A DNA stretch of 64,000 bases from Octopus bimaculoides. Taxonomy: Eukaryota. The notes beneath the pieces were generated by a model. That model saw only the letters and a program-made list of their open reading frames with translations. It made no database searches and was not told where the DNA came from. The position numbers and the translations under genes were made by a program. Where the stretch lies: the NCBI RefSeq assembly GCF_001194135.2, contig NC_068991.1, positions 44,618,044-44,682,043 on the forward strand. Direction: 5' to 3'. This document shows positions 27,338-64,000 of the stretch, piece by piece. Every line of letters begins with the position of its first letter. Within the stretch, counting starts at the first letter, position 1.

Positions 27338-27541
27338 CTTTATTTAAAACATGTTCCATCCACTCTTCATCTGTAATATTCTCATTATCCACAATATTTT
27401 TAATACACTTGCTACGTAATGTTCCTTGGTAGAGTTGCATACCAATTAGTGCAAAGATGGACAACATGAAGCACGTAAGTATCATTACATCTCTTAACCG
27501 TCTGACGGCTTCTAATAAGGCACCCACGATTGTTTTTAAAC
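27338..27541 (-). CDS. Nav1: Nav alpha subunit coding exon 6 (domain I S4-S5 linker, S5)
   Basis: (G)[67 protein letters not shown]; acceptor gttcacag, donor gtaaga; 204 nt. Confidence 0.97.
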
Positions 27542-27749
27542 CTGTGAACACAAATAAATAAGTAAATTAGTAATTTGTACAAAGCATTTCTATTTTACCT
27601 TATCTACCAGTCACCACTGAAGAAGAATAGAAATGAGTAAAAGGTAAACAACAAAGTAAACAAAAATTATTGCTGTGGAATAAGGGAGCTCTTCTTTAAG
27701 CTAGAAATGAATAGGAATATAAGTCCCCATATCAACAGAGTAAAATGAT

Positions 27750-31614: not shown

Positions 31615-31741
31615 CTAAACAAAAAAATATAGAAACCTTTATATTATAGTTATAAATATAATCCATTGTCGATTGTCATTATAATACACACACACACACA
31701 CACGCACAATGTACCACAGATACATATATACACACATAATA

Positions 31742-43916: not shown

Positions 43917-46409
43917 TAGTAGGATGTGTTAAGTTTAAGCAAAGACATTTTTGAAGAATTGGCAGAAAACATATAATCATTCTCTGGAGAAGCAGTTGTA
44001 AGTCAGTTAACAATGTCAATAGTCGAAATCCTTACATTAGTCTCCAATTTATTTGTGTCAGTTTTCTAAAACTTGAATTTTCTTAAATGAATTTTCTTAG
44101 GTGTAATTAATAATTTGAAAATGTACAGTAGTGGTTTCCAAAGTAGGCAATATTTTCTCACCTTCCTTGAGGGCAGGGAGTATAGTGGAAAGATCCAAAG
44201 AGTCATGAGGAAAAAGGGACCAATATAGTCAATCTCTTATGTAATGACACAGTCATTTATTATATTTAAGTGTTATCTAATACTTCATGAATGCACATAT
44301 ATTGATATTATATTCAGAGTGGTTAAGTACCACTTTTTGAGTGATAATATCCTAACAAGCAGCGTAAAATCTTGAGTCCTGTACAGATAATAAAATCTCT
44401 CGACCTCCTACACATTAGATTATTGATATATTAATCAATAATGCTGTATATAGATATGCCTGAGACTTCAGGATCCTTTTTACTTTTGCTAAAAATACGA
44501 GACTGGGCAATCAACCCATTCCTGGATATCAAGAATGAGGAAACAGGAATGGTAGAGGAAGAATTGATTTCACTCTAAAATGACACTAAAATAAGGCCAA
44601 AATATGAAAAAGATTAAAAAAAATTACATTATAATGATTATCAGTTACAAAAATACATTTCTCTCTGCGATCTGCATTATTGAACAAAGTCAAGATGTAT
44701 TTTATTGTTTTCCTAACATCATATTTAGTGGATGTAGTAGAACAAGGCTTCAGTGCATTGTCCCAGTTTCTTTCCAAACAAAGAGACTAAAAATTACTGA
44801 ATGTGAGGACCTAAGACTTTTCTCAGTACATTCCTGATTGATGTTGAGAAGTTGATACACCTGCATTAAGCATTGCCATCCCATTAAAACTGTGAAGGCA
44901 ATGTAGTCACATGTGAAATGTAAATTTACTTGCTCATATTGGTTTCAAATTTTGGCACAAGGCCAGCAATTTTGAGGGAGGGGGTATATCAATTACACTG
45001 ACCCAGTATTCAACTGGTATTTATTTTATTGACCCCCAAAAAGATGATAGGTAAATTTGACCTCAGTGGAATTTGAACTCAGAACCTAAAGATGGATGAA
45101 ATGCTGCTAGGCATTTTGCCTGCCATGCTGATAATTCAGCCAGCTCACCACCTTAAATTTACTTGTCATACTGTTGACTAAATCAATTTATTGGATTAAG
45201 TTTTAATTTGTAAAATACATAAGTTTGTTTACAGTGATAGATTAGCTATTGTAAATCTGCAGTAGACTAAATACTGATACCAAGAAAGAAGTGTGTTTGT
45301 TGTATGTGAGTGCATAGGATGGGGTGTTAGGGATGTGGCTTGTGAGCAAAGAAGGGCAGCAACTGGAAAAAGTCTAAGAACCATTGATCAACAGTAACTA
45401 TTTCAGCTTGATCTTAATCCCAAAATATGAATGTGCAGCATTCACATTCCTGTCCCATAGATTGTTAATTCTTGTAATAACATTTATTTTATTCTTTCAG
45501 TATCTAAAATTATCATATCTTATACTTTAGGGATACTGGTCATAATTTAAGAACTCTTTCTTTTTGGAATATGTTTGATAGACTTGAATCTTTTACTCTT
45601 TCCCTTTGATCATAAAATATACTTCTAAAATTTTAAGATTTTCACCCATTTTTATATTAATTTCTAAAATAAATTTATTCCATCTCCCCTTACTGTTACA
45701 AAATAAATTTTCATTGACAGAAGAACAATTTTAAAATATATTTTTATAAAAAAAGAAAGCTTTCAAAATCCCATCATCACATTATCATATATCACATTTG
45801 TTTAGGCTTTAAAGAAATCAAACTTGTTCTTAATTCTGGAGCCATTCCTAATTAGTTGAGTTAATAAACAATTCTTAAAATAGTAATTTCATTATGATAA
45901 AATGGTTGATACAACTTAAATATTATCATATCTCCAATAAGAGATGAGCAATAATGTAAAATTTGGCATAAAGAATTAGCAAGTATAGACAAAAGTCTTA
46001 ATTAAAATATTTGACAAAAGTGTTATGGCTGTTATTGTTAGTCTGGCTATAAGAATAAGTGTACTAGTATCAAGCTACAAAGAAAAAAAAAGAAAAGAAA
46101 AAAGCAAGAGCACTGCATAAACAAACCTATTTATTGTTTATTGATTTGTATAAATTGGAAAACAGTTTTAAATGCTGGGATTTGCTCAATAACTAACAAT
46201 CATACACTAAATAAACTTCTGTGGGTTTTCTTTCCTTATATAGTTAAGCGACAAATTCTGTCTTTGGGAAAACAACTTATACAACCAAAAGATATCTACT
46301 AACATTTATAGAAATTAGAATTCGTAAATTATTTCAATCAAATTATTTTGACTTGCACATTATTCAGAATCAATTAAAAATTTATAGGAAAAAGTTATGT
46401 TTAACAAAC

Positions 46410-46691
46410 CTTCATATTATGATAGTACTCATCAAGATCTTCCAGTGGCCGACCCTGAAACTTTCCAGGCACCTCCCCAATAGAAGGGGGAAGGCCTTTA
46501 CCAGCTTCAAACTTAGGATTCGGCTTCAGTTCCATTACATTTTCTTCTTCATCAGAATCTGCGTCCTCTGCTTGAGCACGCCTCTCGGCAATCCGGCGTT
46601 CGATGTCAAACAAGGTTTCCCTTGTGAACAGCCGGAAATACCCGGAACTACGAGTATCTGCTTCAGCTTCCACATCTCTGTCCGTTTCCAT
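46410..46691 (-). CDS. Nav1: Nav alpha subunit coding exon 1 (cytoplasmic N-terminus)
   Basis: METDRD...FRLFTRETLFDIERRIAERR...KPNPKFEAGKGLP...GRPLEDLDEYYHNMK; strong Kozak aaagccATGg; donor AAG|gtttgt. The ORF-track start at 46703 is a GTG. Confidence 0.95.
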
Positions 46692-46777
46692 GGCTTTTAT
46701 CACTACTCTCCTTCTTAGCTAGCACCAACCACACTGATTCTAAAAAATGATCCAGTGTAGCATCCTTTGAGGAAATA
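46692..46777 (-). other. 5'UTR part of the start-codon exon (so an upstream non-coding exon must exist)
   Basis: Polypyrimidine acceptor gctttcttttcag ending at 46778. Confidence 0.75.
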
Positions 46778-48124
46778 CTGAAAAGAAAGCAAAAAACATA
46801 TGTGATATTTGCTTCTTTTTAAAAGAATTTTAGCATTTATCAACAATAATAATAGTTTCTAACATGGGCGAAAAAACAACATTTTGGGATAGGTATAGTT
46901 GATTACATTGAACACAGTACTTTACCAGTACTTATTTATTGGCTTTGAAAAATAAGAGACATAATTAACTCACAACATAAAAAGATAACTAAATACAGTA
47001 AAGAATTTTGCCACATAATCTACTGATTCTGCCATCCACCCAAATTCTAAAACATGAATAACAATGAGCTAACTAGGAAGCTTCAATGTAGTTACTTGGC
47101 CTGCTAGAAATCACACTTTACCATCTGAAAAAAAGGAAGGACCCTTTGAATAAGCTAGTCCTAGGTACACTACCTGAAAGGAAGAGGGATGGTTACAGTT
47201 GGAACACCTTTGATCATGCACCTGTTTGTTTAGGGCTCATCCAGAGCTAAACAATGACACCAGTAATAATAACTTTGAGCTTTTATATAACTCTTATCAT
47301 CATCATCATCATCAACATCATTTAACGTCCGTGTTCCATGCTGGCATGGCTTGGACGGTTTGACTGGGGACTGGCAAGCCAGTAGGCTGCACCAGGCTCC
47401 GATTTGATCTGGCAAGGTTTCTACAGCTGGATGCCCTTCCTAATGCCAACCACTCCAAGAGTGTAGTGGGTGCTGTTTATGTGCCACTGGCATGGGAACC
47501 AGTCAGATGGCACTGGCATCAATCACTTTTGGATGGTGCTTTTTACATGCCAACAGCACAGGAGCCAATTGGGATGGAGGGTGGTTGGCATCAACCATGT
47601 TTTTATGTGGCACTGGCATTGGGCACAACTACAATTTCCATTTTGATTTTGATCTTGATTTGATTTTGATTAATCAAAATCAACTCTGCCAGTAACAATT
47701 ATAATAATTGGTTCTACTAAAGGCACAAAGCCTGAATTTGAGACAGTTGTCAGCTGATACTTGATTGGTATTTTATTTTATCAATCTCAAAAGGATGAAA
47801 GGCAAAGAGTTGGTCTCTTTGAACTCAGAATGTAAAGAAGCAAAAGAAATACTGCAAAGTGTTTTGTCAAAATACTCTAATGAGTCTTTCTTTAAAACAT
47901 TTTAATATATTATGGTTGAAATAACTAATCACTTGAAACAGCACAATATTTGAACCAGTCAAAATATTACACATGTAGAAAATAAAGGATGTACATAGAT
48001 AACAATAAAGTTAGATACAATAATATCCTTTTATATTGTCACCAGAAATAGACCCCTCAATATCTAAGTGGCACTAGAATTCAAATAGGTTAAACCAGCA
48101 TGTATTCTTTCAAAGGTCAAGAAA

Positions 48125-48320
48125 TAAGAGGTGGCACACAAAAGAAAGCGGAATTTTGCAATATTATTTTATTCATTTAGTTTTACATGTTTACACTTTT
48201 ATCGCCTTCAAAGTATTCTCCGTTTGAAGCAATGCATCGGTCCAGGAGCGTCTTCCACTATTCGAAGCAGTACTGAAACTCTTGCAAAGTGATGCCTTTT
48301 AAAGCTTCTGTTGTTTTTTT
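48125..48320 (-). mobile_element. Mariner 3' end fragment
   Basis: gaggtggcacacaaaagaaagcggaattt TIR-like end; the reverse strand resembles a mariner C-terminus (CFE*WKTLLDRCIASNGEYFEGD). Confidence 0.6.
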
Positions 48321-48334
48321 TCCGACAAATATCA

Positions 48335-48800
48335 AGGAGTGATGTTTGTAGAGGCCACAGCCCATGGAGAACTAGCCCATAGATTTAGGAAAGCTCTAAG
48401 GGAGACCAAACTCAACATTAAGATTGTTGAAAAGCCAGGGAACTCCATCAAATCACAACTATGTAGGATGTACCTTGTTGAGAATACCATATGTACGAAT
48501 GATAACTGCATGGTATGTAGGATTAACTCTGGCATTAATTGCAGAACTAGAAATGCAGTCTACATCATAAGATGCATAGGTGCTTGTAAAGACATGAACA
48601 TGACATACATAGGAGAGACATCTAGGATCATTGTGGAAAAAACTAAATGAACATTTGAGACAATATGACGACAAAAAACAGTCCTCCATATGCCAAGGAC
48701 CAACATGGAGGCAATCTGGGTCAACTTGGCACCTGCATTTTATCCAAGCACCCAAAAGGACCTAACACTCAGAGGAAATGAAACATCCCCATAAATGAAA
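48335..48800 (+). mobile_element. Penelope-like element fragment encoding a GIY-YIG endonuclease
   Basis: CTNDNCMVC...NCRTRNAVYIIRCIGACKDMNMTYIGETSR, then EH after a frameshift; this is the Cys-rich GIY-YIG (VY...YIG) signature of PLEs. Confidence 0.75.
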
Positions 48801-50198
48801 TATCCCCAGTACTAAATAGGAAATGTATGTAGTAGGTAATCATACCCCCCATACCCTCAGTTTACATTTATATACAGGTAGAATAGTTAGTGGGCTGTTA
48901 TATAGATGTGTGTGTGTGTGTGTCTGTGTGTGTGTGTGTGCATACATATACGTATATGTATATGCACATGTATGTAGGCAAATGGATATGAATGCAAACA
49001 GATAGATATAAAGATGGATAGGTACATAGGTAATATGAACAGACAAGCACACATACACATGCAAATGAAGACTGAAACACCTGACCATATACACACACAC
49101 TTCACTTTACACAAGGATACATATGGAGACACACATCCATACATACATAGTACATAGTCACAAAAACCCATACACGGACACACTCAGACATGCACACACA
49201 AGGAGACAGAGGTACACACACACACATGCAAACACACACACACAAAACACACAAACACATGAATATGCAGAATACATGCATGTAAATGTACACACATACA
49301 TATATACATACGTACACACACACACATACACGCATACTTTCACTTACATGCATACATACATACATACATACATACATGTGTATGCACACACACACACTGA
49401 CCCACACACATGTGCACAAACAAACAAAAAGAACGCAGCTTAGATAATGGACAGAGTCAATGACTATTGAAAAGGTTGCANNNNNNNNNNNNNNNNNNNN
49501 NNNNNNNNNNNNNNNNNNNNNNNNNNNNNNNNNNNNNNNNNNNNNNNNNNNNNNNNNNNNNNNNNNNNNNNNNNNNNNNNNNNNNNNNNNNNNNNNNNNN
49601 NNNNNNNNNNNNNNNNNNNNNNNNNNNNNNNNNNNNNNNNNNNNNNNNNNNNNNNNNNNNNNNNNNNNNNNNNNNNNNNNNNNNNNNNNNNNNNNNNNNN
49701 NNNNNNNNNNNNNNNNNNNNNNNNNNNNNNNNNNNNNNNNNNNNNNNNNNNNNNNNNNNNNNNNNNNNNNNNNNNNNNNNNNNNNNNNNNNNNNNNNNNN
49801 NNNNNNNNNNNNNNNNNNNNNNNNNNNNNNNNNNNNNNNNNNNNNNNNNNNNNNNNNNNNNNNNNNNNNNNNNNNNNNNNNNNNNNNNNNNNNNNNNNNN
49901 NNNNNNNNNNNNNNNNNNNNNNNNNNNNNNNNNNNNNNNNNNNNNNNNNNNNNNNNNNNNNNNNNNNNNNNNNNNNNNNNNNNNNNNNNNNNNNNNNNNN
50001 NNNNNNNNNNNNNNNNNNNNNNNNNNNNNNNNNNNNNNNNNNNNNNNNNNNNNNNNNNNNNNNNNNNNNNNNNNNNNNNNNNNNNNNNNNNNNNNNNNNN
50101 NNNNNNNNNNNNNNNNNNNNNNNNNNNNNNNNNNNNNNNNNNNNNNNNNNNNNNNNNNNNNNNNNNNNNNNNNNNNNNNNNNNNNNNNNNNATATATG

Positions 50199-50241
<43 letters not shown>

Positions 50242-51129
50242 GTATGAATGATACAGATGGTGAGTTAACCAAGAAACTGACATACATCATGCATGTGCAA
50301 GGTGCAAGTATGAGAGATTTGCATAATGTGTGAGCAAGAGAGCAAGTGGATCTGCAAGTGTATACAAAACTGAAAAATTACACTTGTATGTACACATATG
50401 TATTATGCAAGTGAGTCTGCATAATGTGAGCATAGTGTGTGCTTTCATGCAAATGGCTCTGCAGAAAGATAAATGAGTGATGGTGATAATATTTTTGCAA
50501 GCATACATATGATTTATGACATCTGTACCAGAGAAAAAAGAGGTTGTAGAAAGTTCTGCATTATGAAAACTACTGGATGCTAGAGCTATTTGTTGCTGTC
50601 AGTGATCTGCTGCATAGCTGTTTAATTTGTTTGCCACTGTTGAATTGTGATGGCTCTTGAAAGAGATGCTGTGTTGTAGTTGATACTTCAAGCTGGTATG
50701 CAGTATTTCTGATTGAAGCAAAGTATTTACAGAGGCAAAAATGTAGACTCTGACATTACATTGAGCATTAAATAATTGGGTTCCTAACTGAAAAACAGTG
50801 AGTAGGGTTACTAGACTAGAAAGGAAAAAGGAATGTCTGACTGAAAAACTAGTGTAGCTAGAGTTAGTGTTGTAACAACAGAAAGTTAGAACACATGGAA
50901 AATTTTGTAGGTTAGGAAAACAGTTAGAAAATAAAACTGCTTAATTGAAGGTCAAGTTCACCACTGCAGAAAATACTGAATTTGTAAATATGGGCTTGCG
51001 AAAAATGCAGAAAATAATAATGGATTTGTAAATACATGTTTCTAGAACCATGCAGAAAATGTTAATGAACTCGTAAACATGTGTTCAAAAAAAGTTTTTT
51101 AAGTGTTCTATTTTGAAAGTCACAACAGA

Positions 51130-52525
51130 TTACTACATCTTGTAAAGGCAAGAGGAAAGGAGCTATGGGAAGAATAGCTTTGAGCTTCTGTGTTCTTATA
51201 GCCAAAATAGTAGACAGTTTAGCATTGTGTCAAGAAGAGATACTAACAATGGCATATTCTTAGTGGAACAACAGCAAAATTCCTTAACCAGGTGTAAGCT
51301 ACTATACCTAACAGTCATCATCCTGAAGAATGTTTCTGACAGTGTTCCACACTTTGTTATCTGGTAGTTGCTAAGAAGACTAGGTGTAAATGAATGGCTT
51401 GTGAAGTCTGTGCAAAGAAATGTCAAGGTGCAGTCAGTGAGGCAAGTGTTTCCCTCACTGACAAATTGAAGTGTGAAGGACAAATTGAAGTATGCAGTTA
51501 GGAGTCAATTAAGGCTCAGTCCTGAGACTCCTTCAGTTTATTATACTTCACCAGGTTATAATAGAGAAGTTTAGGGCTGGCTATCTGTGGGAAACTTCTG
51601 CATACTAATGACCTAGTTCTTAGAGTTGAATATGTAGTAGATTTAGAAAAGAAATTTCAGACTTAGGAAACAAAATCTTAAATTGTGAGGCATCAAAGTA
51701 AACTCAGCAAACACTAAAGTTTTGATATGCAGGAAAGAAAATTCTGCTACCATCAAGGAAATGGCTGTGCTTACTAAGCAGATAAGGAGCGAATAGAAAT
51801 TCCATATGGTGTACCAAGTGTGAACTATGGATACATACATACAATGACAGGCTAACAGTAAAGGTGAACTGTATATGTTGCACAGACAGATACACAGGGG
51901 TAGTAAGCACTAAGAGCACATGTAAAAGAGTTTCTCTTAAATGCTTGAATGGCTCCCTAGAATTGTTAGTTTTTGTTACCTAAATGATTTAATTTGCAGA
52001 AGAGATGTAAGAACAAGAGATAAAAAGTTGAGGATGTTATTACCAGTATTGGTAATAGCTCTCAGAGTGAAGGGCAGATTGTATTGTGATTGTGTATAAT
52101 CTGTAATGCAAAAAGGTATTGAAACATGGCCTTGGATGCAGGGGATTTGCAAAGATTAAAAAGAAACGAAGTGAGTATGCTCTTCTGATTATGTTAATGT
52201 GCATGTATGATGCAACACAAATGAGCTGAAACAAGTTGAGTATAAGCGGAATCAGATGTAGTGTGCAAGAGAGAAGATGGTACAGTGATGGTACAGGCAT
52301 GTAATACGTTAAGAATATGCAGCTGTATAAAAAAGAGTAGGTTACTCAAAGTAGAAGAAACCTAGGAATACATGAAATAAAGTGATGAAGACTGATCTCA
52401 GGATGCTGAGCCTTACAAAGTCGATGACAAAGGAACATGATGATTGGCAACAGAGTACTAGAAAAGATACCACCCACCCACCCATACAAGAAAGACCTAA
52501 TGAAAATTAAAATGATGGTAGTAAT
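51130..52525 (+). mobile_element. Old, heavily decayed RTE LINE fragment
   Basis: gaagactaggtgtaaatgaatggcttgtgaagtctgtgcaa (RLGVNEWLVKSVQ) is homologous to KLGIDEWLVRAVQ at 29655; further matches near 52240-52280; gatgatg tail. Confidence 0.65.
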
Positions 52526-53141
52526 GGCAGCTTGAAGATATATATGTACATTTGGTTCTATTACCCAATATATTTTTGTTAAGCATCCATTTCCTGTTCC
52601 TTACCTCTTTGACATGCTTATCTCTCTATCACTAACCTATCACTCATCCTTTCCCCATTCAATCTCTCCAACTTATACTCTCTAGTATCCACTTTGCCAT
52701 TATTCTGTTTCTCTCATTATACTTTCACTCCAACACTGCAGCTCTTCCACTACCCCCACCTCTACTACTCTCTCTTTTGGTCATGTTGGCCTCTTTTGGC
52801 CTTGAACAAACAGACACCATAGGATAGTGAGGACTCTTCATTCAGACTTGTAGAGCATTCAGCAATCCCCATTGTTGGTGCTGTCATAAAATTCTCTAGT
52901 GTATGCTGTAATGCAGTTAACAAATGAATGGAGACAACATAAGAGTCAAAAGGACCCTTTATTGTATCTGAGAACATGCTGCTGATACAATAAAATGCAC
53001 TTAGTACCTTCAGTGGGTGACAAATTGGGCAAGTGTCTTCTAATAGAACTCTGGGATGATCAAACCCTTTGGTAGTCAGACACAAAAAAAAAGAGAAGAA
53101 AAACAAAAGGCCTGCTGTCTCTCTCTCTCTTTCTCTCTCTC

Positions 53142-53172
<31 letters not shown>

Positions 53173-53720
53173 CATCAGCCACCAGTCAAGTGCCTTCACA
53201 TGCACACACACACACACGTGTGTGTGTATGTGTTTGTATATATATATATCTATTATATATACACACATACATGCATGTGTTACTGTCACCTTGACTTGAC
53301 ATCACATGATAGTCATGAGTGTCCTTCATTTCTAATCTGCCATGAAAACATGTCTAGCTATGAGAAAATATTAGCTTACTTGGAAACCAGTGAGGGTTGG
53401 CAACAGGAAGAGCATCTGGTTGTAGAAAATCCACTATAACAAATTCTATCTGACTTGTGTGAGCATGGAGAAGTGGACATTAAAATGATGATGATGTAGA
53501 CACATACATAATTATCTCTTCACACATATTCACATATAAAATTACTTAGACTTACATACCCCGCCTCTCTCTCTCTATTCACACACACACATGTAATTTT
53601 TTGACAAATGGGTATATATAAATTAGTGTGTTGAGTGAAACGATTGTTGTACTGAATAAAGACTGCTAAATCGGTCTTCTGTTTCCTTCATCAGTTATGA
53701 TATATATATATATACACACA

Positions 53721-54956
53721 CAGGGTGCATAAGGTATTTGAGGACATGTTTTTTTTGAGTCATTGCTGCATTTTTTGCTAACTGTATAATCTTTGTTTCA
53801 GAAGATAATGATGGCAGACCCTCAGCTTACTCAAGAAATGAAGAGGCATGCTGTTATTGTAGTTATAAAGGCTGATTATAGCGATTTAGAAATATCTCGA
53901 TTTTTAAAAGTTGCCATATCTTTCGTCTACAAGGAAATGTAATACCAGTATCAAAGCATAAAAAGCATTCTAAATACTCTGAAATCATCAGAAAACTTGA
54001 ATTTATCCAGCAAGTTCAACAGACCATTGATTACAATCCCAGAAAGTTCATGAGGTCAATTGCAAAAAATCTCCATGTGTCAGAAGGTACAGTCAGAAAT
54101 GTTGTCCACGAAGACACCAGATATAAGTCTTATATGATGAGGAACGGTCAATTTGTCAGAAAAAGCAAAGGAAAATCACTACATCAGCTCTAAAAGGCTC
54201 TTAAACAAACTGAAAAATCCAGCAAAAGAAGATTTGATTTGGTTTTTCTCAAATGAGAAAAACTTCAACCAAGATCAAAAAGTTAACAGAAGAAATGATA
54301 GATGGTTATGTGCAGACCCTTCTGAAGTTCCAAGTGTTATGCATACAAAATTTCCTACAACTGTCACGGTTTGAAGGGTTGTCAGCAATGAAGGACATGT
54401 GATGCTTCCTTACTTCTTTCCACAAGGTCTTAGAGTTAACTCTGCTGCCTACAGTGAAGTCCTGGAAATAATTAAGCCCTGGATAGACAGTGTATGCAAT
54501 GGAAGGCCATATGTGTTTCAGTAGGACTCTGCACTATCATACATGGCTCTAGTAATACAGGAATGGATGGCTGAAAATTTTCATGATCACACAACCCCTA
54601 ACATTTGGCCTCCTAATTCCCTAGATCTCAATCCATTGGACTATTATATGTGGAGCATTGTTGAGAAAGAGGTCAATGAACATACCCATAACACCAAAGA
54701 TTCTTTGAAAGCTGCTATAGTCAGAATAATGTCCAAAATGAACTAGGGGCCACTTGATTCGAGCATGTAGATGATTTAGATCTCATATAGAAGCATTTGT
54801 TGAAGCTGAAGGTGACTTTATTGAATGACATTATAGAAAAGAAGGTTTATTTTTATCCTCATAGCATTTGTTGACAAATAAAGTTATTATCTGTTATTAT
54901 ATGTCTGTTTTTTTTTATAAACATAAATCTGTCCTCAAATATCTTACACATCCCCT
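53721..54956 (+). mobile_element. Full-length, inactive Tc1/mariner-superfamily element (maT/DD37D-like)
   Basis: Imperfect TIRs cagggtgcataaggtatttgaggaca / tgtcctcaaatatcttacacatcccct; transposase motifs WFFSNEKNF and WPPNSLDLNPLDY; stops and frameshifts. Subfamily assignment is by motif resemblance only. Confidence 0.85.
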
Positions 54957-54959
54957 AAT

Positions 54960-55009
<50 letters not shown>

Positions 55010-55630
55010 GAAATTGTAGTCATAGCCAGTGCTGATGACATGTAAAAGATACCCACTACTCGTGGCTGGTGTTAGGAAAGGCATCCAGCCGTAGGAACCA
55101 ACCCAAATCAAGCTGGAACTTGGCACAGCTGTCTGGGTTACTAGCCCCAGTCAAACCGTTAAAACCATGCCAGCATAGAGAACAGACGCTAAATGATGAT
55201 AATGATGATGATGATATATTTATATAACATACATACATATACATATGAGAAAGAGAAAAAGAGAAAGCAGCAAATATTTTCGTTATGTTGTGGTGTTTAA
55301 AGTGTAGTATTTGAGAAATACTGTTGAAGGGGTCAAAAACAAGATAGATAGAAAACAAGTAAGAGAATGAATGAAAAAGGGAGAAAATGAAAGAAAGAGA
55401 AAACTGAGGGAGACATCACCTTATTACATCTGATATTTCTAACAAGTCGAATGAGAAGATGCATTGAAATATTTTTCTTCTCAAAGAACTCTTTCTACGT
55501 TGTCATTCTCAATCTTTCTTGATTTGAACTCTAGCTTCTCCCCCACCCACTTTAGCTTCAATTTTATAAATATTCGTGAATTTTTACAAACAATACACAA
55601 TGTTTCAAGCGAACTACAATACACTGTTAC

Positions 55631-55828
55631 CTTTTACTCATACGTTTGGTGATTTCTCCGCGAGGAATACGGGCACTGATACTGTCGCCACGCAGGAGCG
55701 ATAAGGTTCTAAGTTATTGCGTAACATTGTAAAACGTTGTCTGCTTAGAATTGGAAAGACAGGAAAAGTTCGGTTGTTTCCGGATAGTTTCGGCTTCAAC
55801 GTAAACGGGTTGACCTTACAGTACATGA

Positions 55829-55830
<2 letters not shown>
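55631..55830 (-). promoter_or_regulatory. Candidate non-coding first exon and TSS region of the Nav gene
   Basis: CpG-rich unique sequence downstream of (CT)n/(CA)n tracts; donor AAG|GTAACA at 55630 (alternative AAC|GTATGA at 55643); has an inverted paralog at 63330-63530. Confidence 0.6.
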
Positions 55831-55873
<43 letters not shown>

Positions 55874-55937
55874 NNNNNNNNNNNNNNNNNNNNNNNNNNN
55901 NNNNNNNNNNNNNNNNNNNNNNNNNNNNNNNNNNNNN

Positions 55938-55984
<47 letters not shown>

Positions 55985-55989
<5 letters not shown>

Positions 55990-56213
55990 TAGTGTTGCTT
56001 CAGAACTGGTATCGTAAGATCGCCGAGGCAATAAACTGGCCGGCTTTTGGAATAGCTAAAATTGGGAATACCTCATGGAGAAGGAAAAGGGCACAAAATT
56101 GGGGGACAAAAATTTAAAAGATTGAAATGAGCTTAAACTCAGCCACAGGCCCTGATGGATTTCCAGCTATCTTCTTACAGAAATGCAAAGGTGCTCTAGC
56201 AAATTTCCTGTTA
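55985..56213 (+). mobile_element. CR1/L2-like LINE RT fragment interrupted by a Helitron-like insertion
   Basis: SLNSATGPDGFPAIFLQKCK matches the RT N-terminal (S/A)xGPDG motif. Confidence 0.55.
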
Positions 56214-57290
56214 TCTATATATATAAAAATGAGAATGTGTGTGTGTCTGTCTGTCTGTCTGTGTGAATCCCTAAAACTCGAGAACTACGCAACCAATTTC
56301 ATTCAAATTTTACACATGCCTTACTTAGGGTTCCAGTTGTGTTTTAGTCAAAAAATTTTAACTTCTTGCAGAGTTCGAGCCCACGGCAACATAATATCTC
56401 CTCCACTATTTAAGTATTACGTGTCAAAAGTGAAACAAAAACACTCATGTCAAATACTTTCACTTTAAAAATGAAACTATTCTACTAACTGAAACAATCA
56501 CATTTCGATACTGTAATGACAGATACTTTCAGAGAGAGAGAGAAAGAGAGAGAGAGAAAGAGAGATGTATATGTATACATATAGATGNNNNNNNNNNNNN
56601 NNNNNNNNNNNNNNNNNNNNNNNNNNNNNNNNNNNNNNNNNNNNNNNNNNNNNNNNNNNNNNNNNNNNNNNNNNNNNNNNNNNNNNNNNNNNNNNNNNNN
56701 NNNNNNNNNNNNNNNNNNNNNNNNNNNNNNNNNNNNNNNNNNNNNNNNNNNNNNNNNNNNNNNNNNNNNNNNNNNNNNNNNNNNNNNNNNNNNNNNNNNN
56801 NNNNNNNNNNNNNNNNNNNNNNNNNNNNNNNNNNNNNNNNNNNNNNNNNNNNNNNNNNNNNNNNNNNNNNNNNNNNNNNNNNNNNNNNNNNNNNNNNNNN
56901 NNNNNNNNNNNNNNNNNNNNNNNNNNNNNNNNNNNNNNNNNNNNGCAATGTGGTGCATAAATTGTCAAGTAAATGAGACGCATCTTTGCCTCCACTGATT
57001 CACTTGCAAAGTGTTGAGTAAAATTATTTCGTTGCAGACCTCCTTTGGGTCTTTTTATTATCACTGCGACACACATAGTCCCCAGTTAGTAACATTGATT
57101 TCAAGGCCCTCCTAGATGAGAGACTGGCATTTCACTTAATGTCTATGTTCCATGCTGGCATGGATTGGAGAGTTATTAATGTAGAAATATGGTATCGTAG
57201 CTACTAACAGTTGAGGGTTGCATAGTCTAGACGGCGTTTTTAGATTTCATTATTCTCTTTAACCCGGGCAAAGCCGGGTATTTCTGCTAG
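56214..57290 (+). mobile_element. Non-autonomous Helitron-like element
   Basis: A|TCTATATATATAAAAATGAGAATG(TG)n(TCTG)n 5' end; 3' hairpin acccgg-gcaaag-ccgggt (57262-57279) followed by CTAG|T; inserted in AT with no TSD. Confidence 0.8.
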
Positions 57291-57672
57291 TATAGAATAC
57301 AGGAATACTTTGATGCCCCTCACTCCCTATAACTCCAATTTTGTAAGCTGTAGAGAAGGGATGATTTGTTTACATTGAATTTAATAACATACTTTACCTA
57401 CAATTTAGACATTAAACAGTTTATTCATGCGAGTACAGAGACTAATATTATCATCTAACAGGAGCAATAAGGTTCTAAATAATTATTTGTTGTTACACTG
57501 TAAAATGTCGTCTGCTTATAACTAGAAAGTCCGGAATAGTTTCGACTTCAAATGATTAACAATACTGTGTGTGTGTGTTTGTATGCGAGTGTATCTGCCC
57601 GCGGGCAAGCGTAAGAAAGTGGAAGAGAGGTAGATAGATAGATAGATAGATAGATAGGTAGTGAGTGAGAGA

Positions 57673-57718
<46 letters not shown>

Positions 57719-58196
57719 TGAACGAAGGAGTGATAGAAAGAACAATGAAAGGGAGAAATATAAATTATTTCATGCCTACTCGGAGTTTGTCGTTTCTGAC
57801 TTAAAATCGCATTCCACCTTCCTCCTACTTTAATTACTATATAGCAATAATTTAAAAATTCATCAAAAGTAATATTTTTCGCCCCGTATCGAGTTTCCAC
57901 TTATACGCATGCATGTATGTATGTATGTATGTATGTATGTACGTATGTCTGTCTGACTGTCTGTCTGTCTATCTATCTATCTATTATTATTATTATTGAT
58001 ATTATAAAAACCATGAGAGAAGATGGAGATACGATTAGTAAAAGTTTATTAATACATTGACAAGACCCGGTACCTATATTGGTAGGTATTCAACCAGTTT
58101 AATCTGGGATATTTGTATCCCTCCGAGGTTTATATCCTCACCCGTACTTTGGTACACACACACACACCCACACCCACACCCACACACAAATATATA

Positions 58197-58252
<56 letters not shown>

Positions 58253-58390
58253 GTGTATATGTATATATATATATACATATGTACATATGTACATACATAT
58301 GTATATATATACATATCCATACACACACATTTATAAAAATACGTACATACATACATATTTAATACATACATGCATGCCTGCACACATACA

Positions 58391-58421
<31 letters not shown>

Positions 58422-58871
58422 TTGATATTTGAGAATCTACGCAAATAGCGATACATACATACGCACGCATATACACACGTGCGTGTGTATCTGTCGATAG
58501 TTTCGAAATAGAACGATATGTATGTGTTGAAAATGTGTGTGAAAGAGAGGGTATTAAAAAATTAAAAATACAAAACTGATTATTTAAATTACTACCTGAA
58601 TAAAGAAAATCAATGGACACCAACGTAACAAGGATTTCAAGGAAAAATGATACGACACTCTAAATTCAACCCATAAAACAATTTTTCGTGCTTTCCTCCT
58701 GTTTTCTAGTTGACGAACTGAAATTTCAACATGTCAGTCTTCTCATTTGTATGTATATTGTATATATAGATCGATATCTATACATGTTTATTGCCTAGTA
58801 TCTATCTATTAGCAGATAATCCTTTGACGTTGTTTATCTCCATGTATCTATTGTTAAGAAGTAAAAATATA

Positions 58872-58932
<61 letters not shown>

Positions 58933-59018
58933 GATAGATAGATAGATAGGTAGGTAGGTAGGTAGCTAGCTATGTATATCTATCTATCTATCTATCTATC
59001 TGATGAGTTTGTATTTTT

Positions 59019-59111
<93 letters not shown>

Positions 59112-59126
59112 AGCAAACATAACACA

Positions 59127-59860
59127 TCTACTACATATGTGGAAAATGGGTGTGTGTTTGTGGCGTTGTTAGCTAACTCCTCTTACATCGTTTTATTGAT
59201 TTTGATGAAACTTGACACGTGAGTAGAACTCATGTCTGGAAACCTCGTAATATACTTAGATTGGTGAAAAAATCGATAATACGGCCCCTTGAAGGGACCT
59301 TTATATCTACCTCATATAGTTAGGGAAATAACCCATAGCACCTGTACAATATATTTTTAAACACTGAGGGGAAATAACCCATTTCATTGTTTATGTTCGA
59401 TTACTTTGAATATTGATATTTTGTGTGTCCTATTTCTAATTTTTGCAGACAATATCACTTTTATATTTTATTTGACACGTGAGTAGAACTCATGTCTGGA
59501 AATCTTCTGACATACTTAGATTGTTGAAAAAATCGACAATAGGGCTCTTCCAATGGATCCTTCTACCTACTACATATTACTAATATTTTATTTAAACAAC
59601 CCAAAGGAAATAACCCAGAAGGATAGACATATCATTGAGAACAATAGATTTAGTTGGTGGTCTTGTTATTTCTATTCTAGCTTTTGGCGGAGTAGAAGAG
59701 GTTAGAAAGGGTCAAGCGGTGAAGACATTATTTCGGCCTAGCTAAAGGCATCTGGAAAATGCTAAACTGCTGTCAGAGAAAAAGCATTGTTCCACCGTGG
59801 GAAAAGTTCTGTTGCAGTGTTAATTTAAATTTAGCTAGAGTGGATCGAATCCACTTCATG
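59127..59860 (+). mobile_element. Probable non-autonomous Helitron-like element with an internal ~70-bp direct repeat
   Basis: 5' tctactacatatgtggaaaatgg; repeat ttgacacgtgagtagaactcatgtctggaaa..tacttagatt..tgaaaaaatcga at about 59212 and 59472; terminal hairpin gtgga-tcgaa-tccac. No CTAG end seen. Confidence 0.45.
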
Positions 59861-59869
59861 CATGCAAGA

Positions 59870-59936
59870 TCTACTATATATATAAAAGTGCCAACGCATG
59901 TAACCCGCAGATCTTGAGTCACTCTGTTGCTTCTGC

Positions 59937-60006
<70 letters not shown>

Positions 60007-62005
60007 CGCACTTATCCAACAAGCGAACTGCCAGTATCATTTTTCCATCGCCAAGGGTTACAACCAAACCAATCTCTCTTCATGAGTTCATAGATTTACC
60101 TAATGAATACCTATTTTAATTATATTTTAACTGGATTTCCTCTCCCTTTCTAGACAAAGTGAACCACAATAATACCATTGATGTGGAATGTTCATATGTT
60201 TAGCCTATCTCATCCACTATTACATATGTTTAACCTATCCGATGATGGAATACTTGGCCTATAGAATCCTCGCTTGATACGATGTTCCAATAGCTGGGAT
60301 ATTCTAGAAATAATTGTTTGAGACTACGCATACATTCTTATTATATATATATATATATACAGTATCCCACAAAAGTATGTACACCCCTAAAAAATTTCAG
60401 TAAAATTGCCATTACTCTGATAATATCGAAGGAAATCAAACGAAATTTATACTGAATAAGATATATTATACATGAAAAACAATATCGGCGGCAGCAGCAA
60501 CAACAACAACAGCAGCAACATCATATAAAGAATATGTAGTTTTAAGGAGAGTAGGTGACTTTTCAACACACATAACATATATATACGTACATACATACAT
60601 CGGTCTACTATTCACTATTTTCAACTCGAGATTACCTGTGTACGTTTATAAATGTGTGTGTGTCACGTCCTATAACTATCTGTCTCTACTTTTGTGGGGT
60701 CTTCCCTGTTACTGTCACATATTGAGATTTTAAAATTACGTAAAAATTTTCAAATTTGATATATTGAAATAATTTTCCACGTTAATTCCGATTTTGTTAT
60801 TTATTTGTTTCAGAAAAATTGCTGAAAAATATTACTGAAGTTTAAAGTTTAATCAATTTTACCTAATCAGAAAACAGGGTTTCGAAGCTGGCATTTTCTG
60901 CATGATAGCTCTCTATCACAAAATGAAATTAAAATCATTAGGAGGAGGAATTTTTATTAAACAAACGAAAGCAAAGCATTACGACGACCAAGGTTGTAAG
61001 AACTTCGGATCTTTTTGGTTTGACGGGCAACACTTGTTTTCTTAGCGAAACACTTTCAAACTTGGGACACTGGTAGAATGTGTCATATAANNNNNNNNNN
61101 NNNNNNNNNNNNNNNNNNNNNNNNNNNNNNNNNNNNNNNNNNNNNNNNNNNNNNNNNNNNNNNNNNNNNNNNNNNNNNNNNNNNNNNNNNNNNNNNNNNN
61201 NNNNNNNNNNNNNNNNNNNNNNNNNNNNNNNNNNNNNNNNNNNNNNNNNNNNNNNNNNNNNNNNNNNNNNNNNNNNNNNNNNNNNNNNNNNNNNNNNNNN
61301 NNNNNNNNNNNNNNNNNNNNNNNNNNNNNNNNNNNNNNNNNNNNNNNNNNNNNNNNAACCCTAACCCTAAAACCCTAAGCTAAAACCAGTACAAACGCAC
61401 GAACGATGTCATAAATAACAGTGACAAACGAAATATATACCGCTGATAGTTGTTGTTGACAACGGATAGTTGTTGTTGACAAACAACGGCACTAATTTTA
61501 TTCAAGGGAAAAGATCCCGTGACACCGTTGTTTACATTTCACGACATTAATTGTTTTCACCTCAATAGACGTCAGTGATTGGTTGAAATTACCGAACTAC
61601 GACAATTTTTTTACATGAAATAACTTCGAATACAAAATTTTTTATCTGTTCCATAACACAAAATATACAAGTATTCGAAGTTTGAAAGTGTTTCGGTACC
61701 AAAAACACTACATAAAACATAAATGAAAAATGTTGCCCGTCAAATCAAAAAGATCCAGAACTTCTGAAGTTTTAATAAGTCTTAATGAATAAAGTCACGT
61801 GAAATGGTCGAAAAGACATGTAAATAATTCAAAAAGGAAGCCCCCCCCCCCTCAACAAAGTTTCTTTGCGAAAAGTTGCACAAATCTGTCCTGATCAAGA
61901 GGCCTATCTGTCGGGGAAGGCATACTCTGACATGGAATAAACAAAAAATTATATAAGACATTCTATTGTAAAAAATTGCTTGGCAACGACGGGCTACGCA
62001 ACTAG
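59870..62005 (+). mobile_element. Possible Helitron-like element with nested insertions
   Basis: A|TCTACTATATATAAAAG 5' end at 59870 and ggcaacgacgggctacgcaaCTAG|T 3' end at 62005. Pairing of these two ends is inferred. Confidence 0.4.
60997..61765. mobile_element. MITE-like element with inverted ends and an internal (TAACCC)n-like tract
   Basis: ggatctttttggtttgacgggcaaca and cgaaacactttcaaactt (61007-61063) are inverted at 61678-61756; aaccctaaccctaaaaccctaa abuts the internal gap. Confidence 0.7.
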
Positions 62006-63278
62006 TTTCATATAAAGGAAATTATGACTGAACGAAAATAAAGTTTTTTCAAAAAATTTTCTTTTTTTTATATTTATACTTGTCCCTTTCCATCCGTCCC
62101 ATCCTTTCCATTCACAATGTCGTATTCCCAATAATAACTTCTCTTAAATCTCTTAAAGTTCGCTGTTTGTCTGCTAGGGTTGCTACTTTGAGCTGTTCGC
62201 CTTTTAACTATTTTTGGTGCAAAAGTCCATCAAGTTACGTGCCCGCATAATTTTAGTCCTTTTTATTATAATTAAAAGCTTTTCTATTAAAAGTGAAATC
62301 AGAATTTAATTCAAGATTTTCTGTCCAAAATTTTGGTTACATATCACTTCGGCTGCACATTCAGTATTTGCCATTATGAGAGACACATTATAGTGCAAAT
62401 TTCTGTATATTAACAGAAATTTTAGCCAAAATTAGAAGATTAGAAATATTTGAAAATCATCATAGATTTGGAATATTCGTAGAACGAATACTACTAAATA
62501 TAGAATTAATTCATTTTTAATTCACGTTTTTTTCATATACTTTTAATTTCTTTGTTATATACCAGTTTAAATACTTGAAGGTGGCGTGTTGGCAGAATAG
62601 TTAGCTTGCCGGACAAAATGCTTAGCATTGGGATCGATGCAATCGACTAACCCTCCCACTTAAAATGGCTGGCCTTGTACCAAAATTTGAAAGATTTTTA
62701 TAGATATTTCAATATATCATTTTAAATTTCAATGTTTAATTGAATTATTTTAAAGCTGTACGATGGACACAAGTTTCAAGTATTATTGAAAAGGGATAAA
62801 ATTCATTTGAACATTTGTTTTAATACCTAGAGAAGTTTTGGATATCATATATAGACTTAAACGAAATAGTAATTGTTATAAATTACCTATCGAAGGTTTA
62901 AAGAAAATTGAATCCATGGATGCTTATAAATCATGTAAAATTACAGTTTCTACAGCAAAAGAAATTGATTGGGAAACCTTCGAAATTATTACGGAGTAAA
63001 AATAGAAGTTATGTCAATTTGATTTTAATTTAATCAGAATTGAAGTTTTCTAAAATAAATCTTTTAAAAATTCACACGTCTTTATGAAATTTTTTTTGCT
63101 TAGGTGCTTTCATTTGGTACTTTTTACATTTATTCAGTGCATTTTAGCTATGGAAATAGAGCTTGTTAAAATTGTTTTGGAAAAACTGTTGTCTGCCTCA
63201 TTTTCGTTTTTCAAATCTCCCACCCTATGGAGCCACAGCCATCTTTTTCTTCTTCTTCGTCGTCGTCGCCGTCGTTTT

Positions 63279-63314
<36 letters not shown>

Positions 63315-63329
63315 TCTCTCTCTCTCTCT

Positions 63330-63530
63330 CATTTACACATCTTAAGCCAACCACTGAACGTTGAAGCCGAAACTATCCGGAAACAACCGAACTAGTTCTG
63401 GCTTGCCAGTTCTAAGCAGACGACATTTTACAGTGTTACGCAATAATTTAGGACCTCATCGCTCTTGTTTTGATTACAACATCGTTCTCTATACTCTGCA
63501 CAAAAAAGCCATCTAATGTCTAAATACAAG
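63330..63530 (+). promoter_or_regulatory. Candidate non-coding first exon of a divergently transcribed paralog
   Basis: Inverted homolog of 55631-55830: a 36-bp identical block plus a 44/50 block; preceded by (CTA)n(CT)n; donor AAG|GTAAAG at 63531. Confidence 0.6.
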
Positions 63531-64000
63531 GTAAAGTAACTTATTAAATTATTTGAAAAATATTCATCTCTTCTTTACTGCTTACAAAATTGAAGGTAGA
63601 GGGAAGGAAGTATTAGTGTTGAAACCAAGAACGATAAAGACATATTTGAAATAGTTTTTGAAGTGATAGAAATTGTATGCATATAATTCTTCGTTGGAGT
63701 TTTGAAATAGTTGCTGTTACCTCATAGGAGAAGGAAAAAAGCAAGGAATTGGTTGTTTTTATTGTTACATTCATATTCTAGTACTCCTGTGCTTAATACA
63801 ATGTGAATTAGGATTCTGAAAAATTTTTTTTCTCCAAAAATTATTAGTTATTATTATTTTTTTTTTTGCTTCCCAATTCTGTGCCATTTTCCTCCTCTTT
63901 AAGGCACGAAACTTATTCTTGAAGCCCACTATTTGTCTACCTTCTTTTACGTAAGAAACGCTATCATCTCTCTCTGTCACACACACACACACACACACAC

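What the first reader, a model, noticed from the sequence alone, without database searches (positions are those of the whole stretch)
55631..63530. Head-to-head pair of paralogous first exons: evidence for a divergently transcribed twin of the Nav gene
Seen: the reverse complement of 55767-55802 is identical over 36 bp to 63358-63393. The reverse complement of 55701-55750 matches 63410-63459 at 44/50 with no indels, and cgctc.tg follows in both. Both copies are preceded by a (CT)n tract and ctcat.tac. Both have an AAG|GTAA splice donor 70 vs 71 nt after the cgctc anchor (55630 on -, 63531 on +), although the sequence between has diverged. The Nav start-codon exon has an acceptor at 46778, so it needs an upstream exon. 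Inference: an inverted duplication produced two outward-facing genes about 7.5 kb apart with a retained promoter/5'UTR module. The right-hand gene is most simply a second Nav1 paralog. A head-to-head Nav pair sharing an upstream region would be an unusual co-regulation arrangement.
Basis: partly seen in the sequence, partly recalled or inferred. Interest (0 to 1): 0.85.

Follow-up and report, generated by a model that had tools for sequence, protein, structure and literature searches.

The report
Three-copy repeat at Nav gene's start
The inverted match is real, but it is two of three copies of a short non-coding unit just upstream of a sodium-channel gene: the left copy may mark that gene's start, and nothing shows a second "twin" channel gene.

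Summary

It is a trio, not a pair. A third, more decayed copy lies at 57299-57572, in the same orientation as the left copy. The repeated unit is about 0.3-0.4 kb. It always ends at a (TG/AG)n microsatellite, and homology runs about 180 nt past the proposed donors.

All three copies lie in a gene-free, microsatellite-rich stretch of about 8 kb that has kept its CpGs (o/e 0.8-0.9). The 55 kb to its left, which holds the Nav exons, is strongly CpG-depleted (o/e 0.20, with TpG/CpA excess). The switch, at 54.9-55.6 kb, falls at the left copy. I read this as the 5' edge of a germline-methylated transcription unit. The ATG exon's acceptor is also conserved in a related species. Together these make the left copy a credible Nav first exon or promoter.

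No evidence points to a right-hand Nav paralog. I could not settle whether the trio arose by local duplication or from a retroposon, because no cephalopod genome or transcript data could be searched by DNA. Interest is modest.

The parts
55434..55825 (-). Copy A of the repeated unit. The strand given is that of the proposed exon; read as a retroposon it would be on +.
   Evidence: Homologous to copy C over 55434-55651 (72%, z about 8.6 against shuffles) and 55693-55812 (86-88%). nhmmer profile hit 55553-55825.
55693..55812 (-). It is CpG-rich: 14 CpGs between 55643 and 55806.
55629..55633 (-). Donor-like site AAG|GT of copy A. The last 'exon' base is 55631.
   Evidence: The same motif sits at the homologous position in B (TAG|GTAAAG, last base 57398) and in C, so it is part of the repeat.
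55826..55989 (.). Microsatellite bounding copy A: (TG)n then (AG)n. Assembly gap 55874-55937 lies inside the (AG)n.
   Evidence: No homology among the copies beyond the microsatellites.
57299..57572 (-). It has the same orientation as A, is shorter on the side away from the microsatellite, lacks about 20 nt of the core, and has lost most CpGs.
   Evidence: 75% over 220 nt to copy C, E = 1e-34. Also.
57560..57716 (.). Microsatellite region bounding copy B: a short (TG)n, then (TAGA)n and (GA)n.
63336..63709 (+).
63348..63467 (+). It keeps 7 CpGs, although the adjacent 72 nt kept only 1 of 6.
63528..63532 (+). Donor-like site AAG|GT of copy C. The last 'exon' base is 63530.
63250..63335 (.). Microsatellite bounding copy C: (TCG)n, (TAC)n, (CT)n.
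54936..55559 (.). Support interval of the CpG-depletion boundary (maximum likelihood at 55059). I infer it is the 5' edge of the germline-methylated Nav transcription unit.
   Evidence: Likelihood-ratio statistic 138. The boundary lies within one contig (50192-55873).
55400..63600 (.). CpG-undepleted, microsatellite-rich interval with no protein-domain hits. It contains all three copies.
   Evidence: CpG o/e 0.81, or 0.87-0.89 with microsatellites and the three copies masked. No Pfam hits for the interior ORFs.
46410..46777 (-). Nav start-codon exon. ATG at 46691-46689, acceptor cag at 46780-46778, donor AAG|GT after 46410.
   Evidence: Relatives are named sodium channel protein. The acceptor and exon are conserved in L001/L002. 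Other Nav exons match Ion_trans.

Best explanation
The two arms belong to three diverged copies of a non-coding unit of about 0.3-0.4 kb. A and B point the same way; C is inverted. Each copy ends at a (TG/AG)n microsatellite.

All three sit in a gene-free stretch of about 8 kb that has kept its CpGs, directly upstream of the CpG-depleted Nav transcription unit. Copy A lies at that boundary. I take A to be, or to lie within a few hundred bases of, the Nav core promoter and non-coding first exon, spliced from 55631 to the conserved acceptor at 46777.

B and C are most likely local duplicates of this module. B is decaying. The 120-nt core of C stayed close to A through gene conversion between the inverted copies or through a shared function. 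No second Nav gene is implied.

Shown:
- the three copies and their limits;
- the microsatellite boundary;
- the CpG domain switch;
- the conserved acceptor.

Inferred:
- that the CpG switch marks the transcription start;
- that A's donor is used;
- that the copies arose by local duplication.
For: - Three copies only, all within 8.3 kb. None in the other 56 kb of the window or in 20.9 kb of Octopus vulgaris DNA, even with a profile search at E <= 10 (window) or E <= 1 (locus). Independent insertions of an evenly spread repeat family would rarely give this: my Poisson estimate is about 2e-4 at the best-fitting density, and about 1e-3 after allowing for the choice of the 8-kb stretch.
- CpG o/e is 0.20 (TpG 1.35, CpA 1.30) over 1-55060, and 0.15 over 46800-55060, the putative intron 1. 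It is 0.87-0.89 over 55400-63600 with microsatellites and the copies masked.
- The change point is 55059, support 54936-55559, LR 138. That is 70-700 nt downstream of A's donor in the Nav direction of transcription.
- Octopus methylation is concentrated on gene bodies. In a large class of genes it spares the TSS and promoter (PMC9476566).
- The ATG exon's acceptor is conserved in a related species, and similarity falls off upstream of it.
- A keeps all CpGs: 6 in the middle segment and 8 in the core. B and C lost them, partly by different decay products at the same site, so A is closest to the ancestral state.
- A-C identity is 86% in the core but 58-59% elsewhere. B-C is 66-73% throughout. 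This fits constraint on, or conversion of, the core in A and C only.
- No coding potential in the interval.
Against: - No transcript, CAGE or methylation data could be consulted, so use of A's donor and the TSS position are untested.
- The CpG boundary fixes the TSS only to within roughly 55.4-56.5 kb. With three copies spread over 17 kb of upstream DNA, one falling near the boundary by chance is not very unlikely (about 0.1-0.15).
- One fixed end at a simple repeat, and a variable other end, is the classic anatomy of a 5'-truncated retroposon.
- Octopus genomes are about two-thirds repeats, with hundreds of unclassified SINE families (PMC13282606).
- A simple donor PWM does not single out the three sites.
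- The relative orientation of C rests on scaffolding across three gaps.
Confidence: 0.42

Rival explanations
1. The three copies are members of an interspersed non-LTR retroposon family: SINE-like, or 5'-truncated LINE 3' ends. They were copied by target-primed reverse transcription. The microsatellite is the 3' tail, and the conserved 120 nt is the end recognised by the partner reverse transcriptase. The donor-like GTAA is simply part of the repeat's antisense strand, and Nav's start nearby is a coincidence.
For: - All three copies end at a simple repeat on the same side, and homology stops there.
- The other end varies: A and C are about 390 nt, B about 275 nt.
- Homology runs through the 'donor'.
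- Segment-wise mosaic relationships and a shared 20-nt duplication look like subfamily structure.
- The window's abundant octopus SINE (47296-47670, 55036-55215; five copies in the O. vulgaris locus L006) also carries a microsatellite tail, (GAT)n.
- SINEs with 3' tandem repeats and LINE-shared tails are well known (PMC4758252).
- LINEs and SINEs make up about 24% of the O. vulgaris genome, with about 900 SINE families among its recently active insertions (PMC13282606).
Against: - Only three copies, clustered in 8 kb. None in 56 kb plus 21 kb of other octopod DNA.
- No target-site duplications.
- No tRNA-like head and no Rfam match.
- No partner LINE tail in the window.
- The tail motifs differ between copies.
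- No translated trace of the repeat in the huge protein collections.
- CpG retention is uneven within copy C: 7 of 8 kept in the core against 1 of 6 next to it.
Confidence: 0.3
2. The copies are local duplicates with no function, produced by rearrangement in a microsatellite-rich intergenic region. The Nav first exon lies elsewhere between about 55.4 and 56.5 kb.
For: - The copies are clustered.
- The interval is microsatellite-rich.
- The CpG boundary allows a window of about 1 kb for the TSS.
- Many other GT sites score as well as A's.
Against: - The A-C core is much better kept than the rest.
- A keeps every CpG.
- A's donor sits 70-700 nt from the boundary, on the correct strand.
Confidence: 0.17
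3. One reading: an inverted duplication created two outward-facing genes. The right-hand gene is a second Nav1 paralog sharing a retained promoter/5'UTR module.
For: - The inverted arms, donors and (CT)n tracts are real.
- C's core keeps its CpGs.
- CpG density thins right after copy C: o/e 0.47 in 63601-64000. That would fit a second methylated gene body starting there, but only 5 CpGs in 400 nt are available.
Against: - A third copy exists.
- Homology is limited to about 390 nt and ends 290 nt before the window's end. No other inverted homology exists between the flanks.
- No Nav-like sequence lies right of C.
- A small module in three copies does not imply a gene-scale duplication.
Confidence: 0.04
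4. A and C are the long terminal inverted repeats of a large foldback or DNA transposon of about 8.3 kb.
For: The arms are inverted with the microsatellites facing inward.
Against: - No target-site duplication at the outer ends.
- No transposase or any Pfam domain inside.
- A third, internal copy lies in direct orientation.
- The arms are only 58-86% alike.
Confidence: 0.02

Closest known systems
SINEs and 5'-truncated LINE copies with simple-repeat 3' tails (non-LTR retroposons; octopus OR1/OR2/OK SINEs, Ceph-SINEs)
   Same: A short non-coding unit with one fixed end at a microsatellite and a variable other end. The terminal ~120 nt is better conserved, and relationships between copies are mosaic.
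   Different: Only three clustered copies were seen. There is no tRNA- or 5S-like head, no target-site duplications and no partner LINE. The tail motif is not uniform.
Duplicated or alternative first exons, each with its own promoter (for example the variable first exons of clustered protocadherin or UGT1A loci)
   Same: Repeated units of promoter plus non-coding exon plus donor lie upstream of a common acceptor. A and B are in the sense orientation upstream of the Nav ATG exon.
   Different: No transcript evidence. One copy is inverted. Homology extends past the donor.
Head-to-head (divergent) gene pairs sharing an unmethylated intergenic promoter region
   Same: Two outward-facing promoter-like modules flank a CpG-undepleted interval of about 8 kb.
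   Different: Classical bidirectional promoters are under 1 kb apart. The right-hand gene is unseen.
Invertebrate gene-body methylation domains (CpG o/e footprint; octopus methylation patterns in PMC9476566)
   Same: A sharp switch from CpG-depleted, TpG/CpA-enriched DNA over the gene to CpG-normal DNA upstream.
   Different: The footprint is inferred from sequence only. No methylome data for this locus were consulted.

Membership tests
Non-LTR retroposon / SINE family | Many dispersed copies across the genome | tested here: inconclusive
   A profile search found 3 clustered copies in the 64-kb window and none in 20.9 kb of O. vulgaris DNA. No cephalopod genome could be searched by DNA. The metagenome scan gave only chance 20-mer matches; the viral and prokaryote scans found nothing.
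Non-LTR retroposon / SINE family | Simple-repeat or A-rich 3' tail at a fixed end, with variable 5' truncation | tested here: met
   All copies end at (TG/AG)n-type repeats, with no homology beyond them. B is about 115 nt shorter at the other end.
Non-LTR retroposon / SINE family | Target-site duplications flanking each copy | tested here: not met
   No convincing direct repeats at the flanks. The copies are old (14-45% diverged), so loss is possible.
Non-LTR retroposon / SINE family | Small-RNA-derived head (tRNA, 5S or 7SL) with pol III boxes, for a SINE | tested here: not met
   ARAGORN found no tRNA-like sequence. Rfam gave no match at any copy.
Non-LTR retroposon / SINE family | 3' region shared with a partner LINE | tested here: inconclusive
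   No similar LINE end in the window, which includes an RTE-type LINE at 27.9-31.7 kb. The genome's LINE library was not available.
First (non-coding) exon and promoter of the Nav gene | Spliced transcripts joining its donor to the ATG-exon acceptor; TSS signal (CAGE) | not testable with these tools
   No transcript data. The protein collections hold no transcript-derived Nav N-terminus of this species.
First (non-coding) exon and promoter of the Nav gene | Sense orientation, donor site, and a downstream acceptor that requires an upstream exon | tested here: met
   AAG|GTAACA at 55631 on the minus strand. Acceptor TTTCAG| at 46778/46777, conserved in L001/L002.
First (non-coding) exon and promoter of the Nav gene | Position at the 5' edge of the transcription unit | tested here: met
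   CpG-depletion boundary at 55059 (54936-55559), 70-700 nt downstream of the donor. The reading rests on octopus gene-body methylation patterns (PMC9476566).
Head-to-head paralogous gene pair made by inverted duplication | Exactly two copies, with homology extending over gene-scale flanks | tested here: not met
   There are three copies. Homology is confined to about 390 nt, and no other inverted homology exists in 54-64 kb.
Head-to-head paralogous gene pair made by inverted duplication | Paralogous (Nav) coding exons downstream of the right-hand copy | not testable with these tools
   The window ends 470 nt after the right-hand donor. A look-up of a window ORF near the end found no record that would extend the scaffold.
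Terminal inverted repeats of a DNA or foldback transposon | Target-site duplications at the outer ends, and a transposase or repeated whole unit | tested here: not met
   No TSD. No Pfam domain in the interior ORFs.

The most novel reading that the evidence does not exclude
Copy C is an active, outward-facing promoter and first exon built from a duplicate of the Nav core-promoter module. Nav and an unseen right-hand transcript (a neighbouring gene, a long non-coding RNA or, least likely, a Nav paralog) would then be driven by paralogous promoters at the two edges of one unmethylated 8-kb island, and so be co-regulated. The twin-Nav version alone I put at about 0.03.
Probability: 0.12. Interest if true: 0.55.

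Novelty: new member of a known kind. Interest (0 to 1): 0.3.

Why it matters
If copy A is the Nav promoter and first exon, this places the transcription start of a cephalopod voltage-gated sodium-channel gene about 9 kb upstream of its start codon. It also gives a compact, CpG-preserved 120-nt element to test for neuronal expression. It shows that the CpG-depletion footprint can locate the 5' ends of genes in unannotated octopod sequence.

The more exciting claim, a divergently transcribed twin Nav gene, is not supported. The repeat itself is either an ordinary retroposon family or a small local duplication. Neither would surprise a specialist.

Tried and rejected
1. Searching for more copies through protein space. 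I translated two open frames of the repeat and searched the 5.8-billion-cluster collection (no candidate) and the 1.84-billion-representative library (two weak, unrelated hits). Nothing came of it.
2. Exact-pattern scans. A 20-mer against JGI metagenomes gave two hits that match only the 20-mer itself. A 22-mer against viral contigs and prokaryote genomes gave none. These collections hold no cephalopod DNA, so the result says nothing about copy number.
3. Fetching same-species DNA.
- The Nav exon's closest relatives are short genomic Logan contigs of another species (84% aa).
- An RTE reverse-transcriptase ORF led to one O. vulgaris locus of 20.9 kb, which has no copy of the repeat.
- Looking up a window ORF to extend the scaffold past 64000 failed.
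4. Known RNA. Rfam gave only sub-threshold miRNA-like hits on TA/TAGA microsatellites at 58.2-59.1 kb and none at the copies. There are no tRNAs. Folding z-scores of the cores are -0.2 to -1.5 on one strand and +0.1 to +1.0 or -0.9 on the other, so none is significant. A structured-RNA reading is rejected.
5. Target-site duplications: none found.
6. Homology beyond the microsatellites: none.
7. Donor scoring with a simple PWM was not discriminating. The genuine ATG-exon donor scores lower than all three sites, and many other GT sites score higher.
8. TIR or foldback transposon: rejected.
9. My first reading, 'just a dispersed SINE', was weakened by the clustering of the copies and by the CpG-domain result.

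Full report
**1. The observation**

The inverted match is real.
- The repeat finder reports arms 55693-55812 and 63348-63467, 120 nt at 86% complementarity, 7535 nt apart.
- BLASTN within the window gives 88% over 110 nt, E = 4e-34.
- The pairwise alignment shows the 36-nt identical run, the next block with a few mismatches and no indels, CGCTC.TG after it, CTCAT.TAC before it, and pyrimidine/purine dinucleotide tracts upstream of both.

On the gaps:
- The arms do not touch any gap.
- Gap 55874-55937 interrupts an (AG)n tract that continues on both sides.
- The two other gaps have unrelated flanks.
- Nothing here is coding, so frame is irrelevant.
- The three copies described below lie on three different contigs. 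Spacing and relative orientation therefore depend on the scaffolding.

**2. It is a trio, and the unit is larger than the arms**

BLASTN of the right-hand region against the window finds a third copy, B, at 57324-57541. It is 75% identical over 220 nt to 63390-63604, E = 1e-34, and has the same orientation as the left copy.

Local alignments with shuffle controls set the limits:

| Copy | Coordinates | Orientation |
|---|---|---|
| A | 55434-55825 | as B |
| B | 57299-57572 | as A |
| C | 63336-63709 | inverted |

- A and C are also homologous beyond the 'donors': 187 aligned columns at 72%, score 78 against a shuffle mean of 33 (sd 5).
- B and C are 77% alike over 150 columns that include the donor position.
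- The motif read as a donor (TTTACCT on the other strand) is shared by all three copies.
- On the opposite side, every copy ends at a microsatellite: A at (TG)n(AG)n, B at (TG)n...(TAGA)n(GA)n, C at (AG)n(GTA)n(CGA)n.
- There is no homology past these tracts.
- A profile built from the three copies finds no further copy in the window at E <= 10.
- No other inverted homology exists between the flanks of A and C.

**3. The surroundings**

The Nav gene is on the minus strand.
- ORFs at 46401-46703, 27267-27551 and 17551-17772 encode the N-terminus and parts of domain I.
- They match Pfam Ion_trans and proteins named sodium channel protein.
- The ATG exon runs from 46777 to 46410, preceded by a polypyrimidine tract and CAG.
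- That acceptor and the non-coding start of the exon are conserved in genomic contigs of a related species (84% amino-acid identity), and similarity falls off upstream of it.
- The stretch between A and C has no ORF with a Pfam domain, no tRNA and no Rfam family above threshold. It is packed with microsatellites.
- The window shares an abundant SINE with Octopus vulgaris: five copies at 73-83% identity in the 20.9-kb locus L006. That SINE ends in a (GAT)n tail. The window is therefore most likely from an octopod.

**4. The CpG domain boundary (the unexpected result)**

| Region | CpG o/e | TpG o/e | CpA o/e |
|---|---|---|---|
| 1-55060 | 0.20 | 1.35 | 1.30 |
| 46800-55060 (between the ATG exon and copy A) | 0.15 | 1.48 | 1.42 |
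| 55400-63600, microsatellites masked | 0.89 | 1.10 | 1.05 |
| 55400-63600, microsatellites and copies A-C masked | 0.87 | 1.11 | 1.05 |

- A single-change-point model puts the switch at 55059, with an approximate 95% support interval of 54936-55559 and a likelihood-ratio statistic of 138.
- The switch lies inside one contig.
- This is the footprint of germline cytosine methylation on one side only.
- In Octopus bimaculoides, methylated CpGs cluster on gene bodies and are scarce in intergenic DNA and transposons. In one large class of genes they cover the body but spare the TSS and promoter (PMC9476566).

I infer that the Nav transcription unit extends to about 55.1-55.5 kb, that 46.8-55.6 kb is intron 1, and that the TSS lies a few hundred bases further up. 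Copy A sits exactly there, on the right strand.

To the right of copy C the CpG density thins (o/e 0.47 in 63601-64000). Only five CpGs are involved, so no second boundary can be claimed.

**5. Relations among the copies**

| Segment | A-C identity | B-C identity | A-B identity |
|---|---|---|---|
| Last ~115 nt before the microsatellite (core) | 86% | 66% | 66% |
| Middle 72 nt | 58% | 73% | 57% |
| Far segment | 59% | 71% | 45% |

- A and C share a 20-nt tandem duplication in the core that B lacks.
- In the middle segment, 22 of 30 A-C mismatches are transitions.
- A keeps 6 CpGs in the middle segment; B and C keep 1 each. At one site B has CA and C has TG, so the ancestor had CG and A is the best-preserved copy.
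- C keeps 7 of 8 core CpGs but only 1 of 6 in the adjacent segment.
- The pattern fits a tree ((B,C),A), with the core either held constant in A and C or copied from A to C by gene conversion. It also fits mosaic retroposon subfamilies. I could not separate these readings.

**6. Weighing the explanations**

For a retroposon:
- one fixed end at a simple repeat;
- a variable other end;
- homology through the 'donor';
- the very high repeat content of octopus genomes (66% repeats, 11.6% SINEs, about 900 SINE families among the recently active insertions; PMC13282606);
- the known habit of SINEs to end in tandem repeats and share tails with LINEs (PMC4758252).

Against a retroposon:
- three copies within 8.3 kb and none in 56 kb plus 21 kb of other octopod DNA, which an evenly spread family would give with probability around 1e-3 by my Poisson estimate;
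- no target-site duplications;
- no small-RNA head;
- no partner LINE;
- non-uniform tails;
- uneven CpG retention within C.

For a local promoter/first-exon module:
- the clustering of the copies;
- the CpG boundary at A;
- the conserved acceptor;
- the preservation of A.

Against it:
- no transcript evidence at all;
- the boundary locates the TSS only to within about 1 kb.

I commit, at 0.42, to this reading: A is at or next to the Nav TSS and first exon, and B and C are local duplicates. The pure retroposon reading gets 0.30. Non-functional local duplicates with the Nav exon elsewhere get 0.17. A TIR or foldback element gets 0.02.

**7. Comparison with what is known, and novelty**

The thing works like either of two ordinary objects: a short retroposon family, or a duplicated promoter/first-exon unit upstream of a common acceptor.
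- It meets the anatomical tests for a retroposon (tail, truncation). It fails or leaves open the others (TSDs, head, dispersal).
- It meets the positional tests for a first exon (strand, donor, acceptor, edge of the methylated domain). The defining test, spliced transcripts, could not be run.
- It fails the tests for a gene-scale inverted duplication: there are three copies and only 390 nt of homology.

I rate it a new member of a known kind, of modest interest (0.3). The useful outcomes are a concrete, testable position for the Nav TSS and a 120-nt CpG-preserved element.

**8. Limits**

- No cephalopod genome or transcriptome could be searched by DNA.
- The protein-space and pattern scans I tried cannot speak to copy number.
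- The scaffold beyond 64000 could not be retrieved.

Noticed in passing
window 1-55060 versus 55400-63600: A sharp CpG-depletion boundary. CpG o/e is 0.20 with TpG/CpA excess over the Nav gene and the 8 kb upstream of its ATG exon, and 0.8-0.9 from 55.4 kb on. The change point is 55059 (54936-55559). I read it as the 5' edge of a germline-methylated transcription unit.
   Followed up: yes
window 47296-47670, 55036-55215, 57130-57170; L006 2881-4160, 11394-11826, 14764-14937, 16505-16820: An abundant SINE-like repeat with a (GAT)n tail (...CCATGCCAGCATGGAACACGGACGTTAAAT(GAT)n). It is shared with Octopus vulgaris at 73-83% identity, with five copies in 20.9 kb. This indicates the window is from an octopod.
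   Followed up: partly
window 27903-30520 (+), also 20272-20628 (+): An RTE-type LINE remnant with reverse-transcriptase and PHD-finger ORFs, followed by a (TG)n tract near 31740. The closest named relative is a 70%-identical O. vulgaris protein. Similar elements turn up as contaminants in records labelled as bacterial MAGs.
   Followed up: partly
window 42753-43472 (-): Broken ORFs that look like a mariner/Tc1-type transposase (...HPPYSPYLSPTDYHFF...) inside a Nav intron. Judged by eye only.
   Followed up: no
window 61357-61387: A short telomere-like tract (AACCCT AACCCT AAAACCCTAAG) directly after assembly gap 61091-61356. It could be an interstitial telomeric repeat or a sign of a doubtful join.
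   Followed up: no
window 56042-56122 versus 63700-63752 (+) and about 63856-63927 (-): A motif of about 55-80 nt (...ACCTCATGGAGAAGGAAAAGGGCACAAAATTGG...) next to copy A's tail recurs twice just beyond copy C, once in each orientation (scores 49-52 against shuffle means of 26-28). It adjoins an ORF with a reverse-transcriptase-like SATGPDGFPAIFLQKC motif at 56127-56230, which has no Pfam hit.
   Followed up: partly
window 59212-59317 and 59472-59577: A 106-nt direct repeat, 82% identical and 260 nt apart, inside the CpG-normal interval.
   Followed up: no
window 58190-58420 and 58872-59111: Long TA/ATAC and ATCT/AC microsatellites form palindromic low-complexity DNA. They give many sub-threshold Rfam miRNA 'hits' (mir-297, mir-466 and others), all far below the gathering scores. 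These are artefacts of composition.
   Followed up: yes
window 46777-46800 (-); L001 about 720-740: The splice acceptor TTTCAG|TATTT of the Nav start-codon exon, and about 85 nt of 5'UTR within that exon, are conserved in a species whose exon is only 73% identical in DNA.
   Followed up: yes
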